Of a stretch of DNA of 64,000 bases, positions 1 through 55,720 are shown one piece after another. The stretch's first letter is position 1; each line of letters starts with the position of its first letter. The DNA is from Heteronotia binoei (taxonomy: Eukaryota). The position numbers were made by a program, and so were the translations under genes. Location of the stretch: assembly GCF_032191835.1 (NCBI RefSeq), contig NC_083225.1, positions 71,734,001 through 71,798,000 on the forward strand, written 5' to 3'. The notes below the pieces were generated by a model. The model searched no databases. It had not been told where the DNA came from and saw nothing but the letters and a program-made list of their open reading frames with translations.

Positions 1-70
1 ATTAAGATGGGCTGTAAAAGGCAGGCTTAGCACCTGCTGCTACCACTCTCTCATGCTGGGGTCTCTCTTA

Positions 71-228
71 AAAGTCATCCATGGAGCACAAGGCTTCCAG
101 AAGTTCTTATTCCGTACAGTAAAGCATGATGAAATGAACATGACACGGCAGTACTTGATCCATCGTTTCGCTATAGCTTCTACGAGCTTACAGACAGTCT
201 CATGAAATTTACATGTTGCTGCTAACAA
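71..228. repeat. Left arm of an imperfect inverted repeat flanking the Ngaro element
   Basis: 71-125 matches the reverse complement of 5492-5546 at 48/55. 202-228 matches the reverse complement of 5458-5484 at 25/27. Confidence 0.85.
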
Positions 229-708
229 ATACTTGTATCCAAGCATATTGGATACAAGGGTTTGCCCCCAAGGTTGAAATAAAGAGTCAGACACAATAAT
301 TGGATTAAACTAAGGGCCACTTTATTTAATTTATTAATAAATGGCAAGGGCTAAACAGAACCTGTGGCCTGGTCAGGGCCAGGGGTCTCAACAAACACCT
401 CCCCTGCCATTTAACAGATGAGCAACCCAGCCCCTGGCTAGAGCTGTACACCACAGCTCACACCAGGCCAGCTCAGCAAATAGGCAACAAACCGGGACAG
501 TCCAACCACGAGCCGGGCAACTTAATGAAAGGAACCTTTCAGGTAAGCCCAAAAGGACGATCTGCATTCTCCCACCCCGGGCTGGCAAACCCAAAGGTCG
601 ATACTGACAGACCCCTAACCCCACGAAAGGGGGATGCTTTCTGGTCCTCCTCTAGCCGCATAAGCTCATTAACCACAGAAACCTGCCACCACTAAACCAA
701 GCCTCTGC

Positions 709-1308
709 TTAGGCCTTAGCATCCACTGGGAGGCCCAAGGCCACCTGCAGTCTTTGCCGAAGGTCTCCCAAGAAGAGACCATTAACCTCATCCGAAAGAT
801 GAATGCCACCACCCCTATAGAGGTAGGGACAACTAATATGAATGTTTGGATGTGGCAAGTAGTAGCCCAAACCGTCTTCCAAGGGTCTCTGAATTCTTTT
901 ATTAGCCTTGCGATGGACCCTATCGATGCCCAAAGGGTCCCAAACACCCTGCCAAAAAAGGCAGGGGATTATGGCCAACCCAATTATATGAGTCCCAGGT
1001 TATCTCTCCTTGATAGCCCTAAAATCCTCCTCTGCCTGCAGGGCCAAAGCTGTGCCCTTCACCAACCCAAGATCGTTACCTCCCAGGTGTACAACTAAGA
1101 CCTGGGGAGGAGGGCAAGCACTCCCTTGAAATAACAATGGCAACAGCCCAGGCCAATGAAGGCCCCTGCGCCCCCGCCATTCAATGGTAACCCACTGGCT
1201 GAGTCCCAGCTGAGAGCCGACTGAAGTTCTCTGAGCCTGATGAGCAGCCCAAAACACATAACTGTGTCCACAGATGAGAACACAGCTCTTCTGGCCAGGA
1301 AAAACCAC
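709..1308 (-). pseudogene. SGNH/GDSL-like hydrolase ORF of the Ngaro-like element, one in-frame stop at 1000-1002
   Basis: ORFs 1000..1308 and 709..978 share a frame. Motifs: ICGHSY (block I), VVHLGGNDLG (block III GxND) and GGIHLS (block V, with D of DxxH replaced). Confidence 0.8.
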
Positions 1309-1329
1309 AAACTAAAACCTCCCATGAAG

Positions 1330-2223
1330 TTAGGGACTGAGCAGGGGGCGAACATAGGCTTTATAAGCTGCTGAGTGCCAATGGCCCAGATGCTGAATGG
1401 CCGAGAAAGGATAACCCAGGGTGACAGCTGTAGAGGCCGCCCCAATTCTAAAGGAGTGGGTACCAAACTGCACCCCAGACAACCCGAGCTTAGCTAAAGC
1501 CTGAGTAGTCACAACCCAAAATTGATGTTTTGTCAACGGACTGCCATTGACATGACAAAACAAAAATCCCTCCCTAAGACCGCGTACTGCCAAATAGGCA
1601 GCCAGAGCAGAAACTGGACACAACTCCAGCTCAGAACATGTGCTCAGCCCCAAAACAGTTCCCTTGTTACACTGGTCAGTCTTGGAGCGTCGAACGGTGA
1701 TGACCACCTTACTCTCAACTAACCTCAGGTCCTGTAGTAACAAAGCACTACCGGAAACATCATTTCTGGTGTGTGCAACTAGCTCACTGACTCTAAGGGC
1801 CCCAAAGAAGGCAACCAAGGAAGCGGCATGAAACAGTGTGGACTTAAAATAGGATGCACACACTGTGCCCCAAACCCCCTTCAAGCCCCTAAGAATCAAA
1901 GGGGAAATAGGTTCCTAGTGTCAGGATTAGGCCCAGCCTCTCTTGCCCAGCCCTCCAGCATCTTTCGCAGATGAAAGTCTGCGGTTTCCTCCTTATACCC
2001 CAAAGCCTTACTAGCAAAAGCCAGAGCAGACAGGCGTCCCTTAACCTTTTAAAGCAACACAGTAGTGAAGCAACTGCTCCACTGGGAGGGGCCAAACAAT
2101 GCGATACCCTACCTCTGACCTAAAGACCTCAAACTGCCGCACGGCATGTTCATAAGAATTCCTGGTGCTGGGTGCAATGACTAGGTCTATCGCTCTGCAG
2201 GCCTCGGCTCTCCAATCACCCAT
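1330..2223 (-). pseudogene. Tyrosine recombinase (frameshifted) with N-terminal core-binding domain
   Basis: 1330..1899 contains FFGALRVSEL (catalytic R), RRSKTDQ (K), THSFRIGAAS (HxxR) and LGHWHSAAYKAYVR (W/H and catalytic Y). 2041..2223 has the APSTRNSY N-terminal motif in another frame. Confidence 0.92.
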
Positions 2224-3200
2224 AGCTCCTGGGGCATTTGCCCTGGCTCTCGATCGGCTTCTGGGGCCAGCTGACGAAACCTCTCTATCTGTTTACAAGA
2301 GAAAGCGTCAGCCATCCCGTTATTCACCCCGAGAACATGCTCGGCTGAAAATAGTACGTTATGCCGCAGGCAACGCAGAGTGAAGGCCCGCACTAATTTC
2401 ATAACCCTTTGCAACTTGGATGTAAGGGAATTAATAACATGTACCACAGCCATGTTATCACATCAAAAATGAATAGTGTGATTGGCCATATAATTCCCCC
2501 ACAGCCAAACAGCTACCAGGATGGGAAAGAAACGTAACATCTCTGTTCAATCCCGCCTGGCCCCATGAATCTGGCCACACATCTGTGGAAATAGACCCCA
2601 AAACCTAAGGAACTGGCAGTGTCAGACATGACCTGAAGCTCTGCTTCAAGCTTCATGTCTTCCCTCCAAAATAAAATCCCATTGAAGGACTCAAAAAACT
2701 CCTGCCATACCAGTAGGTCTGCCCTCATGTTGCTTGTAGCCCGTATTCTATGCTGTGGAAGTCATAGACCAGCCATCGCATCACAAAGCCTACGCAAGAA
2801 GGCGCGTCCAGGAGCCACAACTTGGAGGCAAAGTTGAGATGCCCTACAAGCTGTTGAAGCTCGAATAAAGTAATCTTCCACTTAAGAAGGAAAGAATCAA
2901 CCCTCTCCCTCAAATCTGCGACTTTCTCAACAGGTATTCTGGACAATTGTGCCAGAGTGTCCAGCTCGATCCCCAAAAAAGTAAGTCTTGTGGCTGGACC
3001 CTCTGTTTTTTCCTGTGCCAGTGGAACACCCAGCTCCACTGCCACCATACCCTTAACAGAATTAAGGTTCCCCAACTGAAATGCAACCTGGGGACCCTGA
3101 AAAGAAATCCTAAAACCAAACATAAAACCCTTTAACAGATAAACCCTATCAACACAATGCGAATATTGGGCAAGTCACTGCTCAAGATAAAGCCACCTTT
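2187..3200 (-). pseudogene. pol: RT / RNase H of the DIRS-order element, frameshifted
   Basis: Fragments LTFLGIELDT, LQQLVGHLNFAS, DLLVWQEFF, SDTASSLGFGVYF and AEHVLGVNNGMADAFS are typical of DIRS/Ngaro RT-RH. Confidence 0.85.
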
Positions 3201-3995
3201 ATCGGACTGGGCCCCTTTTCCAGCTTGGTAATTTCCTCCACCCCCACCCTGCTTCTTTTGGCCTTTATGTGGCTGGGCTCTGGAGCAGTTGTTAAAGGAG
3301 TGAGAGCCACCACACAAGGGGCATTCATGCTTGTACTGGCAAGCCTTCCTGCTACACACATTGGGAGCCAAACTCCCAGCAAAGTAAGCGAGGTTGAACC
3401 GCCTGCCTCGCAGAACTGCGAGAAGAAGAGGAAGAAGTCACAGATGCCCTGGCCACCAAATGACTGCTATCAGAGCGGTCGCCCAAATTTGGTCAAGCAA
3501 AGGACATGACTTGGAGTCAAAGCTGCTGGTGGATACGATCCCACTGAAGGGAAGGGTATACAGCAGCCCTCATCCTGAACTCCTGGTCATATTGAAGCCA
3601 GGTGGGCCCATTAAACATTATATACCCCTTATAAATAATATCCATATACTGTATAAGTGAAGCACCCCTTCAAGGCTGAGCCCGTGCTATCGTCCCAGCA
3701 TATATGAAAAACCCAGGCAGCCAATTGGCCCAAGTCCTGTCAACTTTCCATTTCTTCAATTTTCTTTCTCCTTATCATCCAAATCCTCTTTGTCTTTCTT
3801 CTCCAGCTCCCGGAACAGGAGGGAGAAGACATCCACATATTCCCCTTTTAGAATCTTATCTTTCGTTGCTGGCAGCAAATGGTCCCCTAAAGGCAGTGCT
3901 AAGTCCCCTAAAGGTAAGGCAGTGAAAGGGACAGCCCCATTAGAGGCACTCAAAGGCGAAGAAAAGCCCCATCCCCCCAACATGGGACCTGACAA
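3132..3995 (-). pseudogene. gag: gag of the Ngaro-like element with C-terminal Cys/His finger
   Basis: PLGDHL...KILKGEYVDVFSLL (3756..3995), then WLQYDQEFRMRAA (about 3560-3610, my translation) and CSRKACQYKHECPLCGGSHSFNNC (3132..3371). Confidence 0.75.
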
Positions 3996-4377
3996 GCCTT
4001 GCTATCCAGCAGTGTCCTGGCACTACTCGCAAACCAGGAGAAAAGCAAAGCAAAGCAAAGCAAACTTCTCCGTCGCAGGCCTTTCGCAACTTCCCAGCTA
4101 ACCCCCCCCCCCCCCGGATTTTCTCGCAACGCCCCAGACGGGGGGAGGGGAGGAGTCATGCAGCTCCACGTGACCCCCAATCCCAAAGCGGCGGTCTCGC
4201 TGCTTTAGTTCCCAACCGAGCGGACCCGAAGGCACAAGAGGAGCGGGCGCGCCGAGTTACAGCGGCAGCTTTGCGGGTTGACTGCGGGACTTGCGCCTCA
4301 GCTGCTTGGCTGCTGCCCTTGATTGAAGCGGAGCGGATCGAAGAGAACAGGCGCTCCCAACCCTGAACACGCACAAG

Positions 4378-4677
4378 TAGGGTTGTCGGGTCTAATTCCA
4401 GAAATATCTGGGGACTTTGGGAGTGGAGCCAGGAGGCTTTGGGGGTGGAGCCAGGAGCAAGGTTGTGACTAGCATAATAATCGAACTCCAAAGGGAGTTC
4501 TGGCCGTCACATTTAAAGGGACCGCACACCTTTTAAATGCCTTCCCTCCATTGGAAATAATGAAGGGGCACCTTCTTTGGAGGCTCATAGAATTGGACCC
4601 CCTAGCTCCACCCCAGTGTCTCCTGGCTCCACCCCCAAAGTCCCCAGATATTTTTAAAATGGGACTTGGCAACCCTA
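4378..4677. mobile_element. hAT-type MITE (TAGGGTTG...GGCAACCCTA family) inserted in the Ngaro element
   Basis: Has the family termini. Both halves match the right end of the 54960-55720 copy. Confidence 0.8.
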
Positions 4678-5457
4678 TAGCTAAATTACCCCCAAAAAAC
4701 TTTTTGGTAGAGGCCTTTCACATCACCCACTACCTGATCCAATACCAACAAGGGAAAAAGTGGCTTCCACAATACTGCCCCCACACCCAACCCCCAGAGG
4801 AGTTTGTACTCCATGCTAGCAAAAAGCCTAATCCAAGAAACACCTTTTTTAAAAGAGGAGGGGGGGGGGAGGGAAGGTTAAACTGGCTGTATAATGGAGA
4901 TACGCCAATCCAATCCACGTCCTCGCGTTCACCAGAGACCTAACAGCAGCCCCGATCCTCAGCAACACGGTGCAGTTAAAATCAAGCTCACAGGCTTTAT
5001 CAGCAACCTGATCTCCACTGAAAAGCCTGAATGCTGGGAAGCCAAAGGAAACTGACATGAAGCAGGAGCGAGCTAAAAGCGCTCCTGCCCTGCCTTATCA
5101 GAAACTCAATCAGCCCTTGGTCTTTCTTAAAACGTCCGAAAGCCGGAAGAAAAGGGGAACTGATAAGACCAAAGCCAGCAAGCAAAAATGCTCCTGCCCA
5201 TCCACCTAATCTTCGTTTAAGGAATGCCTAAAAAACAACTGAAACTGATAAGATCTAAGCAGGAGCAAGCTAAAATCTCTCCTGCCTAGACGGATCACCA
5301 GATGGAGACTGGCACGAGCAGGGAAGGCGCACTGCTGCTGCAGCCAGCCCAGCCCCCAAGCACAAGCCTATTGAGCTGTCAATCTTCCTCTCTTTCCCCA
5401 AGGGTGGCAAATGTGTCCCTCCGTCTTTACAGTGAGGCTGCAGGCGATTGGGACGAA

Positions 5458-5546
5458 TTGTTAGCACCAGCATGTAAATTTCATATATGGAGCCTTGCTG
5501 TATGCAGTAAGAACTTCTGGAAGCCTCGTGCTCCGTGGATGACTTT
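5458..5546. repeat. Right arm of the inverted repeat flanking the Ngaro element
   Basis: See the left arm. The ORF track shows KNFWKP(C/R)APWMT on opposite strands at both places. Confidence 0.85.
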
Positions 5547-5849
5547 ACCGTGAGAACTACTGCCTGCACCTTTTTCTAAAGTTTGGACATTTATTTGCAT
5601 TCAAGTGACTTTGGGTGTGGGTTTGTGGTCCCTTATGTATTGATTCTTACATTTATATTAGAACAAACTATTTTTGTTACCTTTATAACTCTTTTGCATT
5701 ATTATTTGTGGAGGCTGGTTTTCACGAAGGGTTCCTTTACCCTTTTTCTCCTGCTCACCTGGAGATTGGTAACAGTGGTTCCCAGGAGGAAATTGTTGGT
5801 TTGGAATCTAAGGCATTGTACCTTTCACACCTATTTGCCTGGACCCTTT

Positions 5850-5925
5850 TTTGAAGATGCCAGGGATTGAACCTGGGACCTTCTGCTTACCAAGCAGATG
5901 CTCTACCACTGAGCCACCGTCCCTC
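5850..5925 (-). mobile_element. tRNA-derived SINE head
   Basis: The reverse complement has A-box/B-box-like GGTGGCTCAGTGG...GGTTCAATCCC. No intact cloverleaf or CCA. Confidence 0.6.
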
Positions 5926-6109: not shown

Positions 6110-6545
6110 CTGAAGCAGTTTACATCATTCTCTCTCCCCATGTGATCTGAACAACAACCCTGTGATGCAGGTTAGGCTGTAAGTCTGTGACTGGTCTGAA
6201 ATCAATCAGTCAGCTTTCACAGCAAGGACCTGGGTCCGGCAGACCCCACTCTGAAGCCCTAACTCCTATGCCCTCCTCAAAGTCCACCACAATCTCTAGG
6301 AATTTCTCATGAACTTGGAACTGGCAGCCGTAGTCAGCACTGGGCCCAATGAGTTCTACCTCAGAGGCTGTAGTGAGACCTTTCAGATCAACAGACTATC
6401 TCTGACGAACTGTTTAAGAGAGAGGAGTCGTCAGCCATTACATCAGCTTACAGCATTCTCCTCTCCTCTCCCCCCCCCCTTTTATCTGAACAACAACAAT
6501 CCTGTGAGGCAGGTTAGGCTGGTTGGAAATCGCCCAGTCAGCTTC
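6110..6545 (-). mobile_element. Two partial MIR/CORE-like squamate SINE copies
   Basis: ACAAC(A)CCCTGTGAxGxAGGTTAGGCTG motif at about 6150 and 6500, shared with 7170-7395 and 55835-56100. Confidence 0.55.
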
Positions 6546-11947: not shown

Positions 11948-12492
11948 GGCTGAGTCCAGACCAGCAGCTTGGGGTCCATGGGAAGCATTCCGAATCAGGC
12001 CAGCTCAAAATGGAGTGGCAGAAGCCTGTCCACCTGCTCCCCTGCAAAGCCCTCATATCCCATGTGGGACACACTTTGCTGAGGTCAGACAGCTGTCGTG
12101 CACCATCCCCATAGCTTGGTTTGGGTTTATTTTTTCCCCCATTCATTTATTTGTCATGTGCATGTGCACCCATGTGCCTATGCGCTTGGAAGCAATGTTT
12201 TTTTTAAAAAAAAAACTGGAAGTGGCTTGTGGGGAGCCCTGGCAGGTTCACACCACCAATGCACCTCCTTTGTGTGCTCCAGTGTTCAGATGCTAGAAAG
12301 GCAGATGGGATGTGGCGCAAAAATTTGCTACCACTTTGGAAATGGTAGCTTTTTGAGCTGTCTCAGAGATGCCTAAAGATGGGGTGAATACAGGAGTAAG
12401 ATGGGAGGCAGATGTGCTTGTTTAGACTTGATTTTTTGATCCATCTGGGAGCTGTCCCTGTATTGGCTTAAAGTCCTGGTCTGGACCCAGCC
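11948..12492. mobile_element. PIF/Harbinger-like MITE
   Basis: TIR GGCTGAGTCCAGACCAG versus GGCTGGGTCCAGACCAG (16/17). 3-bp TSD CTT. Confidence 0.65.
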
Positions 12493-12822: not shown

Positions 12823-12989
12823 NNNNNNNNNNNNNNNNNNNNNNNNNNNNNNNNNNNNNNNNNNNNNNNNNNNNNNNNNNNNNNNNNNNNNNNNNNNNNN
12901 NNNNNNNNNNNNNNNNNNNNNNNNNNNNNNNNNNNNNNNNNNNNNNNNNNNNNNNNNNNNNNNNNNNNNNNNNNNNNNNNNNNNNNNNN
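12823..12989. other. Assembly gap (167 N)
   Basis: Run of N. Confidence 1.
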
Positions 12990-30126: not shown

Positions 30127-30341
30127 TAGGGTTGCCTTCAGGTGGGACCTGGAGATCTCCCGCTTTTACAACTTATCTCCAGCTGGCAGAGATCAGCTCC
30201 TTTGGAGAAAATGGCTGCTTGGAAGGGTGGACTCTATGGTACTGTACCATGCTGAGGCTCCTCCCCTCCCCAAACCCCACCCTCTCCCAGATCCACCCCC
30301 AAAGTCTCCAGGTATTTTCCAACACAGACCTGGCAACCCTA
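30127..30341. mobile_element. hAT-type MITE (TAGGGTTGCC family)
   Basis: TAGGGTTGCC / GGCAACCCTA termini. Confidence 0.8.
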
Positions 30342-30761
30342 TTTCTCATAATAGAGTCCAGGAACATTCACTAGACTGACTTTAGCAGCACCAGTGTAAC
30401 AAACATTGTGTGTATTTAGCCAAGTGACTGAAAACTTCAAAGGACTTTTTAGTGAACAAATGAACCTGGAAGAGTTCAAAATATTCTGGCATAATAATAA
30501 CTAGGACTTCCATAATAACTAGGTCCTGAACTCCCTTTCCCTACTCTGACCAGCAAATAATAATCACATTTAGACTTCAAAAAAGTACAGACAAAGGGGC
30601 TAAAAGTAGAGTCAAGGAACTGATTTCCTTAAAGGTATTGGTTTAACCAGGCAACAGATCTTCCCAGTATTTTCAAAACCTTTTCAGTATTTTCACCTCT
30701 AGCTATGATGGGCTCCAATTCGAATCAGGCTTTGGTTCAGAAAGAGAAGTCTAGCTCTTAC

Positions 30762-43974: not shown

Positions 43975-44185
43975 AAATGGGCTGGGATGAGCTGTGGCTC
44001 ACTGGCAGAGCATCTGCACTGCATGCAGAAGGTTCCAGGTTCAATCCCTGACACCTTCACTTAAAAGGATCAAGTAGGAGGTGATGTGAAAGATCTCAGT
44101 CTGAGACCATTGCCAGTCTGAGTAATACTGACTTTGATGGATCAAGGATCTGATTCAGTATAAGGCAATTTCATGTGTTCACATA
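43975..44185 (+). mobile_element. tRNA-derived SINE with CR1-like tail
   Basis: Homologous to 37980-38160. Confidence 0.75.
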
Positions 44186-54959: not shown

Positions 54960-55720
54960 TAGGCTTCCCAACCCCCCCCCCCCCGCTCTGGCGGGAGTCC
55001 CCTGGGTTTGCAGCCTCATCTCCCGGTCTTCAAGAAGTGGGAAGCGGCGGGGGGGGTGGAGGGGGGGAGAACATACCTGTAGGCTTCATTATAGAGCTCC
55101 TGTGCCGTTTGTAAAATGTCTGCCCCTTTAAGGCTGGGCAGCGAGCAGGAAGGGCTTGGGAGAACAGCCCCGCCCTTTCTTTTGCTTTCGCTTTCACAAG
55201 AGTTCTCCGGAAGAAGATCTGGTAAGTGTGTGTGTGTGAGGGAAGGGGCTGGGGATTCCCTAGTTTGGAGGCCCTCCCCCCTTTTAGAAAGCGTGGGGGG
55301 GGGAGGGAAATGTCTACTGGGCATTCTATTATTCCCTATGGAGAACGATTCCCATAGGGAATAATAGGGAATTCATCCGTTGGTATTGGGGGCTCTGGGG
55401 TGGCTATTTTTTGAGGTAGAGGCACCAAATTTTTAGTATAACATCTAGTGCCTCTCCCCAAAATACCCCCCAAGTTTCAAAACGATTGGACCAGAGGGTC
55501 CAATTCTATGAACCCCAAAAGATGGTGCCCCTATACTTCATTATTTCCTATGGAAGAAAGGAATTTTAAAAGGTGTGCTGTCCCTTTAAATGTGATGGCC
55601 AGAACTCCCTTGGAGTTCAATTATGCTTGTCACATCCTTGTTCTTGGCTCCACCCCCAATGTCTCCTGGCTCCACCCCCAAAGTCCCCAGATTTTTCTTT
55701 AATTGGACTTGGCAACCCTA
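54960..55720. mobile_element. hAT non-autonomous element (TAGG...CCTA family), complete
   Basis: Perfect 8-bp TSD AATGGACT; termini TAGGCTTCCC / GGCAACCCTA. Confidence 0.9.

What the first reader, a model, noticed from the sequence alone, without database searches (positions are those of the whole stretch)
71..5546. Ngaro-like element integrated at the symmetry axis of an inverted repeat through an 8-bp core
Seen: CCCCAAGG occurs at both junctions (266-273 and 5396-5403). Removing the element and one core rebuilds TTTGCC-CCCAAGGGT-GGCAAA, two 6-bp inverted arms around a 9-nt spacer. Further out, the flanks are inverted copies of each other (48/55 and 25/27 bp), and the left flank also has a perfect 10-bp hairpin at 232-258. 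Known: tyrosine recombinases exchange strands inside a short shared overlap flanked by inverted binding arms, and DIRS-order elements integrate from circles without a classical TSD. Inference: the circle junction (...TTCAA CCTTGGGG AAAGA...) recombined with an att-like palindromic target at the centre of an older hairpin repeat. That could mean this family targets a palindromic host repeat.
Basis: partly seen in the sequence, partly recalled or inferred. Interest (0 to 1): 0.75.

Follow-up and report, generated by a model that had tools for sequence, protein, structure and literature searches.

The report
Dead Ngaro element inside a hairpin repeat
A decayed jumping gene of the Ngaro type sits exactly in the tip of a 360-base hairpin-forming inverted repeat of a gecko-like genome, with the same 8 bases at both joints. 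It is a single case and does not show that this family aims at palindromes.

Summary
CCCCAAGG lies at 266-273 and 5396-5403. The flanks are inverted copies (48/55 and 25/27). Joining them rebuilds one long DNA hairpin whose tip is the 8-mer.

The insert (274-5395, minus strand) is a dead Ngaro-type tyrosine-recombinase retrotransposon. It has gag, an RT stump without the catalytic core, RNase H, recombinase and an SGNH esterase, and it carries a nested MITE.

The arms have no counterpart inside the element (no ICR). The element has no methyltransferase and no split direct repeats. So the arms are best read as host DNA, not as DIRS-type terminal repeats.

The 8-mer alone is weak evidence: 20% of comparable window pairs share 8 bases. 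Lying directly between TTTGCC and GGCAAA lowers the chance to roughly 1 in 1000, though that figure is post hoc.

Eleven young, distant Ngaro relatives fetched here share only 0-2 bases (one shares 6) with their targets, and none has inverted flanks. A long core and a palindromic target are therefore not general Ngaro traits.

Earlier notes of this scan already report Ngaro junction cores (AA, GATT) on other DNA of this genome. None reports a palindromic target.

The parts
62..265 (.). Left arm of the flanking inverted repeat. It includes about 74 nt (126-199) that the right arm lacks.
233..259 (.). Small perfect hairpin inside the left arm (11-bp stem, 5-nt loop). It has no counterpart in the right arm.
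266..273 (+). Left copy of the 8-bp junction repeat CCCCAAGG. TTTGCC at 261-266 overlaps it by one base.
274..5395 (-). Dead Ngaro-type YR retrotransposon. Its strand composition is uniform (A+C excess 0.13-0.24 on the + strand) and drops near 5369.
274..711 (-). 3' non-coding part. It has two AATAAA signals on the minus strand (335-330 and 326-321), the last one 47 nt from the joint. There is no poly(A) tail and no B1-A2-B2 repeat set.
712..1311 (-). SGNH/GDSL-like esterase ORF in two pieces (1003-1311 and 712-999).
   Evidence: PF13472, E = 0.0039, below the curated cut-off; tblastn finds the same ORF after the recombinase in L020, L030, L010 and L007.
1336..2223 (-). Tyrosine recombinase. 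The catalytic part is the open piece 1333-1914. The N-terminal part is broken across frames.
   Evidence: PF00589, E = 2.6e-8..
2190..2761 (-). RNase H-like part of pol, in pieces 2516-2761 and 2190-2462. It runs straight into the recombinase, leaving no room for a methyltransferase.
   Evidence: motifs read by eye; no Pfam hit; one relative is named an RNase H type-1 protein.
2728..3174 (-). RT remnant. Only about the last 35 residues of the RVT_1 domain and the linker are left. The catalytic core is missing.
3135..4001 (-). gag-like ORF pieces with a Cys/His knuckle (3135-3437, 3520-3669, 3759-4001).
   Evidence: There were no significant Pfam hits. The assignment rests on position and the Cys/His pattern.
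4378..4677 (.). Nested MITE-like insertion with 67-nt terminal inverted repeats. A second copy lies at window 55493-55720.
5048..5297 (-). Imperfect direct repeats of a self-complementary unit in the 5' non-coding part.
   Evidence: (D1, D2, D4)
5352..5360 (+). Second copy of the junction motif (GCCCCCAAG) inside the element. It is identical to 264-272.
5396..5403 (+). Right copy of the 8-bp junction repeat.
5404..5555 (.). Right arm of the flanking inverted repeat (GGCAAA at 5405-5410).

Best explanation
A Ngaro-type tyrosine-recombinase retrotransposon, now dead, was inserted in one piece into the apical loop of an older hairpin-forming inverted repeat of about 360 bp. That repeat belongs to the host DNA, not to the element.

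State of the copy: the RT core is gone, the frames are broken and a MITE is nested in it.

Most likely route (inferred, not shown): a double-stranded circular cDNA was joined to the chromosome by the element's own recombinase. Strand exchange took place in or beside a short stretch (CCCCAAGG, or part of it) that the circle junction and the target happened to share. This left one copy of it at each joint. It is the same kind of event proposed for DIRS elements (3-nt core) and Cryptons (4-6 nt).

The event is a single case. That this family seeks palindromic repeats is not shown.
For: **Shown**
- The domains and their order are those of a Ngaro-type element.
- The insert is one unit. Strand composition is uniform from about 300 to about 5370 and then flips.
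- The arms are real inverted copies, and the rebuilt site is one hairpin with the 8-mer at its tip.
- The arms have no match inside the element in either orientation, so there is no ICR.
- The arms differ by a 74-nt indel and by an unmatched inner block. Such differences fit an old host repeat better than terminal repeats made in one round of cDNA synthesis.
- The host palindrome is kept right up to the joints (TTTGCC / GGCAAA, then AGGG / CCCT), so nothing was lost from the target.
- The size of the repeat (7-8 bp) equals a tyrosine-recombinase overlap region (PMC3212892).
- The motif recurs inside the element 44 nt from its end. The chance of that is about 2% given 12 + strand copies in 64 kb. 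This hints that the motif is native to the element.

**From the literature**
- DIRS elements are thought to integrate from circles at a trinucleotide shared by circle junction and target (PMC7192593).
- Cryptons integrate at shared repeats of 4-6 bp (PMC3212892, PMC13465315).
Against: - There is only one copy. Neither the empty site nor any other copy of the element or of the arms could be seen.
- This copy has no split direct repeats: the best direct match between its two ends scores 14, against 12.1 +/- 1.4 in shuffles. It is therefore either incomplete or from an atypical lineage, and its ends cannot be checked against an internal B1|A2 junction.
- Eleven young, distant Ngaro relatives share only 0-2 nt with their targets (one shares 6, in AT-rich DNA), and their B repeat ends in TTAA.
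- Unchecked notes of this scan report 2-nt and 4-nt cores for other copies in this genome.
- The sequences beside the core on the element side do not resemble the target arms.
- The target arms are short (6 bp) and sit unevenly around the 8-mer.
- The 8-mer alone is within chance.
Confidence: 0.45

Rival explanations
1. The 8 bp are a target-site duplication or repair product, not a recombinase core. The tip of a long hairpin or cruciform is a fragile point. A staggered break there captured a loose Ngaro cDNA by end joining, or a LINE enzyme inserted it. Filling in the stagger then duplicated 8 bp.
For: - The repeat flanks the insert exactly like a duplication.
- The copy lacks the family's split repeats, as an incomplete cDNA would.
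- Canonical Ngaro insertions in relatives show almost no shared bases, so an 8-bp repeat is atypical for recombinase-made joints.
- The break lies in the apical loop of the predicted hairpin.
Against: - There is no poly(A) tail or LINE-type tail at the 3' joint.
- End joining usually leaves 0-4 nt of microhomology and often deletes target bases, yet here the palindrome is intact.
- The motif recurs inside the element near the joint. A pure target duplication does not predict that.
Confidence: 0.2
2. The 8-mer repeat is a coincidence and the true element ends lie a few to some tens of bases away. The element simply landed, without any sequence rule, in the unpaired middle of an inverted repeat.
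For: - 20% of comparable sequence pairs in this window share 8 nt or more.
- Two other short matches give alternative joints: CAAGGGT at 255-261 / 5399-5405, and GCCCCCAAG at 264-272 / 5352-5360.
- The region is C-rich.
Against: - The 8-mer lies directly between the innermost palindromic bases of the host repeat, which fixes the joints independently to within a few bases.
- The joint chance is about 1e-3.
Confidence: 0.15
3. The inverted arms are the element's own DIRS-type inverted terminal repeats, so the unit is 62-5555 and there is no host palindrome.
For: - DIRS1-like elements have inverted terminal repeats of this size (PMC9210276, PMC7192593).
- No target duplication is seen outside the arms.
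- No other copy of the arms alone was found in the window.
Against: - No internal complementary region is present: all arm-versus-interior alignments are at shuffle level.
- There is no methyltransferase domain and an SGNH ORF is present, which together mark Ngaro-like and not DIRS-like elements (PMC9210276).
- The arms differ by a 74-nt indel and an unmatched inner block.
- None of 11 Ngaro-like relatives has inverted flanks.
- The poly(A) signals lie just inside the joint at 274, not at the end of the left arm (62-265), which would be the unit's 3' end on the minus strand.
Confidence: 0.08
4. The inverted flanks were made by the insertion event itself, as a fold-back copy of one flank during repair. 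No older hairpin repeat existed.
For: - The arms are unique in the window.
- They show no target duplication of their own.
Against: - The arms are about 11% diverged and carry large indels.
- The inner palindrome runs symmetrically up to both joints.
- No known route of tyrosine-recombinase integration produces such copies.
Confidence: 0.05

Closest known systems
Ngaro-like retrotransposons of vertebrates (e.g. DIRS-53_XT of Xenopus; Goodwin and Poulter 2004, as summarised in PMC9210276)
   Same: - The gene order is gag, RT/RNase H, tyrosine recombinase, then an SGNH hydrolase ORF.
- There is no methyltransferase.
- The recombinase's closest relatives are in lizards and frogs.
   Different: - This copy has no A1...B1-A2-B2 split direct repeats and no RT catalytic core.
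- It has an 8-bp repeat at its joints. Canonical Ngaro insertions checked here share only 0-2 nt with the target.
DIRS1-like elements (ITR + ICR + methyltransferase)
   Same: - It is a tyrosine-recombinase retroelement bracketed by inverted repeats of 150-200 bp.
- It has no classical target duplication outside them.
- The proposed integration is from a circle at a short sequence shared with the target (trinucleotide; PMC7192593).
   Different: - It has no internal complementary region and no methyltransferase.
- An SGNH ORF is present.
- The arms are structurally unequal.
Crypton DNA transposons and Starships (short direct repeats from recombination with a matching target)
   Same: [quoted passage not shown] These repeats are read as the substrate of the tyrosine recombinase (PMC3212892, PMC13465315).
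   Different: - Those are DNA transposons without RT.
- Their repeats are 4-6 bp and are seen in many copies.
- Here there is one copy and 8 bp.
Bacterial elements that integrate at palindromic recombinase sites (CTX phage at dif, integron cassettes at folded attC). This comparison is from my own knowledge.
   Same: A tyrosine recombinase acts at a short palindromic or hairpin-forming site.
   Different: - Those sites are conserved, dedicated sites bound by known recombinases.
- Here the palindrome is a single 360-bp repeat of unknown nature, and binding is untested.

Membership tests
Ngaro-like retrotransposon (DIRS order) | Encodes a tyrosine recombinase of the Phage_integrase type | tested here: met
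   PF00589 at E = 2.6e-8, above the cut-off. There are 217 relatives, the best at 57-63% identity in squamates. The R, K, HxxR and Y positions are present in the open piece 1333-1914 (read by eye).
Ngaro-like retrotransposon (DIRS order) | Encodes RT and RNase H | tested here: inconclusive
   Only a remnant is left. Residues 36-89 of piece 2728-3174 align to the end of the RVT_1 domain of relative P0135. The catalytic core is absent and Pfam finds no RVT_1 in the window pieces. RNase H was recognised by motifs only.
Ngaro-like retrotransposon (DIRS order) | Split direct repeats A1-[ORFs]-B1-A2-B2 | tested here: not met
   The best direct local alignment between the two end regions scores 14, against 12.1 +/- 1.4 in shuffles. 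The repeat finder and BLAST show none. Loss of these repeats is common in old copies (PMC9210276).
Ngaro-like retrotransposon (DIRS order) | No methyltransferase; in vertebrates an SGNH hydrolase ORF after the recombinase | tested here: met
   RNase H runs directly into the recombinase. The GDSL_2 match is weak (E = 0.0039). The same ORF follows the recombinase in fetched loci L020, L030, L010 and L007.
DIRS1-like retrotransposon | Inverted terminal repeats | tested here: inconclusive
   Inverted arms do bracket the element. Whether they travel with it could not be tested.
DIRS1-like retrotransposon | Internal complementary region matching the outer ends of the repeats | tested here: not met
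   Outer and inner arm segments were compared with the interior in both orientations. All scores were at shuffle level.
DIRS1-like retrotransposon | Methyltransferase domain after RNase H | tested here: not met
   There is no space and no Pfam hit.
Site-specific integration at an att-like site | Identical short core at both joints | tested here: met
   8 bp at 266-273 and 5396-5403. Significance is modest.
Site-specific integration at an att-like site | Inverted recombinase-binding arms (11-13 bp) around a 6-8 bp overlap, alike in both partners | tested here: not met
   The target has 6-bp arms around a 9-nt spacer. The element-side flanks of the core do not resemble them (by eye). The site definition is from PMC3212892.
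Site-specific integration at an att-like site | The same core and target type at other copies; an empty site exists | not testable with these tools
No sequencing run was listed, so read laying could not be used. There are no further copies in the window.
Host hairpin repeat or MITE family | Several copies in the genome, with terminal inverted repeats and a target duplication | tested here: inconclusive
   No second copy exists in the 64 kb. No target duplication is seen at 62 / 5555. A genome-wide search was not possible. A 19-mer of the arms gave 0 viral hits and 4 bacterial hits, the number expected by chance.

The most novel reading that the evidence does not exclude
A squamate Ngaro lineage that has lost the split direct repeats integrates through a 7-8 bp crossover core. 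Its recombinase is drawn to the tips of hairpin- or cruciform-forming host repeats. This would be structure-guided targeting not described for any eukaryotic tyrosine-recombinase retroelement.
Probability: 0.1. Interest if true: 0.7.

Novelty: new member of a known kind. Interest (0 to 1): 0.3.

Why it matters
How tyrosine-recombinase retrotransposons choose and cut their targets has never been tested at the bench. Only short shared cores have been inferred, from a trinucleotide in DIRS elements to 4-6 bp in Cryptons. A clean joint with a longer core at a palindromic site would give a concrete substrate for such a test. As it stands, this is one old, damaged copy. It offers a hypothesis and a pair of test sequences, not a rule.

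Tried and rejected
- **The look-up of sequencing runs** on 1-5700: none was listed, so read laying could not be used.
- **Other copies in the window** of the arms, the element or the recombinase (blastn word sizes 9 and 7, tblastn): only the nested MITE has a second copy. My nhmmer attempt failed on a format option and I did not repeat it.
- **Split repeats or an ICR in this copy:** nothing above shuffles.
- **A 19-mer shared by both arms:** 0 hits in viral contigs. The 4 hits in bacterial genomes equal the number expected by chance.
- **Recombinase against viral contigs:** no relative.
- **Metagenome scan:** it gave 80 loci, none close to the squamate lineage (at most 41% identity). The esterase-bearing ones sit on short contigs without usable ends.
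- **Scan notes by sequence for the arms:** blank, which means nothing.
- **Classical transposon reading of the insert** (hAT-like, which also makes 8-bp duplications): rejected, because the insert ends are not inverted repeats.
- **Retroposition by a LINE:** no poly(A) or LINE tail.
- **Literature search on squamate Ngaro, and on the WLWD accession:** nothing useful.
Full report
**1. What is in the sequence**

- CCCCAAGG is at 266-273 and at 5396-5403. The neighbouring bases differ, so the repeat is exactly 8 nt.
- The flanks are inverted copies. 62-125 pairs with 5492-5555 at 83%, and 48/55 over 71-125. 202-228 pairs with 5458-5484 at 25/27.
- A local inverted alignment of the two 250-nt flanks scores 45, against 9.6 +/- 1.1 for shuffles.
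- A gapped alignment shows the arms are not equal. The left arm has about 74 extra bases (126-199). The inner blocks 231-256 and 5420-5455 do not match.
- Close to the joints the symmetry returns: AGGG, TTTGCC, CCC on the left face GGG, GGCAAA, CCCT on the right.
- Joining 62-273 to 5404-5555 gives a 364-nt sequence that folds, with DNA parameters, into a single hairpin of -90.1 kcal/mol (z = -11.7). The innermost pair across the joint is 267:5404, and the apical loop CAAG lies inside the 8-mer.
- So 'at the symmetry axis' is correct. The central 61 nt alone are not significantly structured (8% of shuffles fold as well).

**2. What the insert is**

The insert runs on the minus strand. Stop-to-stop frames and searches give this order:
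- gag-like pieces with a Cys/His knuckle (3135-4001);
- a pol remnant (2728-3174);
- RNase H-like pieces (2190-2761);
- a tyrosine recombinase (1336-2223), with PF00589 at E = 2.6e-8 and tblastn to 40 relatives;
- an SGNH/GDSL-like ORF (712-1311), with a weak Pfam match (E = 0.0039). The same ORF follows the recombinase in fetched loci L020, L030, L010 and L007.

The recombinase's best relatives are 57-63% identical. They come from geckos (Heteronotia, Eublepharis), Anolis and Pogona, then frogs.

The pol remnant aligns only with the last part of the RVT_1 domain of a relative. The catalytic core of the RT is missing.

RNase H runs directly into the recombinase, so there is no methyltransferase. 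By the published criteria this is a Ngaro-like and not a DIRS-like element: SGNH ORF and no methyltransferase for Ngaro-like, against ITR + ICR + methyltransferase for DIRS-like (PMC9210276).

A MITE-like element with 67-nt inverted ends is nested at 4378-4677 and has a second copy at 55493-55720.

The excess of A+C on the + strand is uniform over 274-5395 (0.13-0.24), including the long 5' non-coding part. It flips near 5369. The insert is therefore one unit whose right end is close to the proposed joint. On the minus strand, two AATAAA signals lie 47 and 56 nt inside the left joint. There is no poly(A) tail.

**3. Are the arms part of the element?**

- I compared the outer and inner parts of both arms with the interior in both orientations. 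Every score is at shuffle level, so there is no internal complementary region.
- The two ends of the insert share no direct repeat either (14 against 12.1 +/- 1.4). This copy lacks the split direct repeats that define Ngaro.
- Loss of these repeats is common in old copies (PMC9210276). Unchecked notes of this scan also mention a recombinase lineage in this genome 'with conserved termini but no visible split direct repeats or ITR/ICR'. I therefore cannot say whether this copy is truncated or complete.
- Together with the unequal arms and the Ngaro-type gene content, the arms are best read as host DNA. I give the ITR reading about 8%.
- Whether the arms belong to a repeat family is unknown. There is no second copy in the 64 kb and no target duplication outside them.

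**4. Is the 8-mer more than chance?**

- Alone it is not. Shuffles of the two junction regions give a direct match of at least 8 nt in 4-9% of trials. Real pairs of such stretches 5.1 kb apart in this window do so in 20%.
- The palindrome fixes the joints independently. Host sequence reaches at least 266 on the left and starts at 5405 at the latest on the right, and the repeat fills exactly the space next to these bases.
- A perfect 5-6 bp inverted pair directly bracketing the repeat has a chance of about 1%. The joint figure is about 1e-3, with the caveat that both features were chosen after looking.
- Two further matches blur the picture. CAAGGGT at 255-261 and 5399-5405 gives an alternative 7-bp joint. 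GCCCCCAAG at 264-272 recurs at 5352-5360, inside the element.
- CCCCAAG occurs 12 times on the + strand of the window. A second copy within 60 nt of the joint therefore has about a 2% chance. This mildly favours the motif being native to the element's end, as a crossover core would be.

**5. What do other Ngaro elements do?**

A scan of the metagenome collection with an alignment of 23 recombinases returned 80 loci. Many are 20-kb pieces of one assembly (contigs WLWD01..., organism unknown to me).

Eleven elements there have intact split repeats at 98-100% identity, so they are young insertions. For these the ends can be read against the internal B1|A2 junction.
- The B repeat ends in TTAA in all four families with more than one copy; the single-copy L045 ends in TAATAA.
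- The bases shared between flank and circle junction number 2, 2, 0, 2, 6, 2, 0, 0, 1, 1 and 0 (the value for L039 was read by eye across a mismatch in the B repeat that stopped the automatic count). About 0.7 is expected by chance.
- None has inverted flanks (scores 8-15, at chance level). Two sit in tandem repeats.

These recombinases are only 33-37% identical to the squamate ones, so this sets a prior and is not a test of the lineage. It does show that a long core and a palindromic target are not general Ngaro properties.

First-reader notes of this scan on other copies in this same genome speak of a 2-nt AA core and a GATT core. I did not check them.

**6. Mechanism**

The literature model for the order is integration of a double-stranded circle by the recombinase at a short sequence shared by circle junction and target. 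One copy is left at each end. The shared sequence is a trinucleotide in DIRS elements (PMC7192593) and 4-6 bp in Cryptons (PMC3212892, PMC13465315).

The anatomy here fits that model with a 7-8 bp core. I take it as the most likely route: about 0.45 for the whole statement, including 'the arms are host DNA'.

Points against the att-site reading:
- the target arms are only 6 bp around a 9-nt spacer;
- the 8-mer is off-centre by 1-2 nt;
- the sequences beside the core on the element side do not resemble the target arms.

The main rival is capture of a cDNA at a staggered break in the tip of a fragile hairpin, or another enzyme's target duplication (0.2). Next is a chance 8-mer with slightly different true ends (0.15).

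**7. Verdict**

The identification as Ngaro-like, and the position at the centre of an inverted repeat, are supported.

The core as a crossover site is plausible but rests on one old, damaged copy. The proposal that the family targets a palindromic host repeat is untested, and more distant relatives do not suggest it.

This is a new member of a known kind with an unusual, possibly informative insertion site. The N run at 12823-12989 was left untouched.

Noticed in passing
window 4378-4677 and 55493-55720: A MITE-like element with 67-nt terminal inverted repeats, apparently flanked by TA. One copy is nested in the Ngaro 5' non-coding part. A second copy lies 51 kb away at 84-90% identity, and a weaker partial match is at 30274-30344.
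   Followed up: partly
window 5048-5297: Two to three imperfect direct repeats (about 90-110 nt apart) of a self-complementary unit in the element's 5' non-coding part. They may form a row of RNA or DNA stem-loops.
   Followed up: no
window 4050-4350: A GC-rich stretch (GC 0.63) that still holds many CpG, just upstream of gag in an otherwise decayed element. It may be a former promoter or a CpG island.
   Followed up: no
window 5852-5924 (-) and 43988-44059 (+): tRNA-like sequences (Rfam tRNA at 56 and 38 bits; ARAGORN calls the first tRNA-Thr). The first lies 300 nt beyond the right arm and looks like the head of a tRNA-derived SINE.
   Followed up: no
L024, L025, L034, L039, L048, L057, L062, L072, L078, L080 (contigs WLWD01...): Young Ngaro-like elements of four families (those with more than one copy) all end their B repeat in TTAA and start the A repeat right after it. 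A non-repeated spacer of 60-310 nt (most often about 100-160) lies between A2 and B2.
   Followed up: partly
L028 (Ga0256846_1001274, 7744 nt): The contig's first 220 nt and last 219 nt are 99.5% identical, and it contains a 566-nt perfect internal direct repeat. It may be a circular or tandem form of a Ngaro-like element, or an assembly artefact.
   Followed up: no
L040 (WLWD01006249), about 6370-6400 and 12392-12420: About 28 nt of identical sequence flank both ends of one Ngaro-like element. This suggests insertion into a repeat, or wrongly set ends.
   Followed up: no
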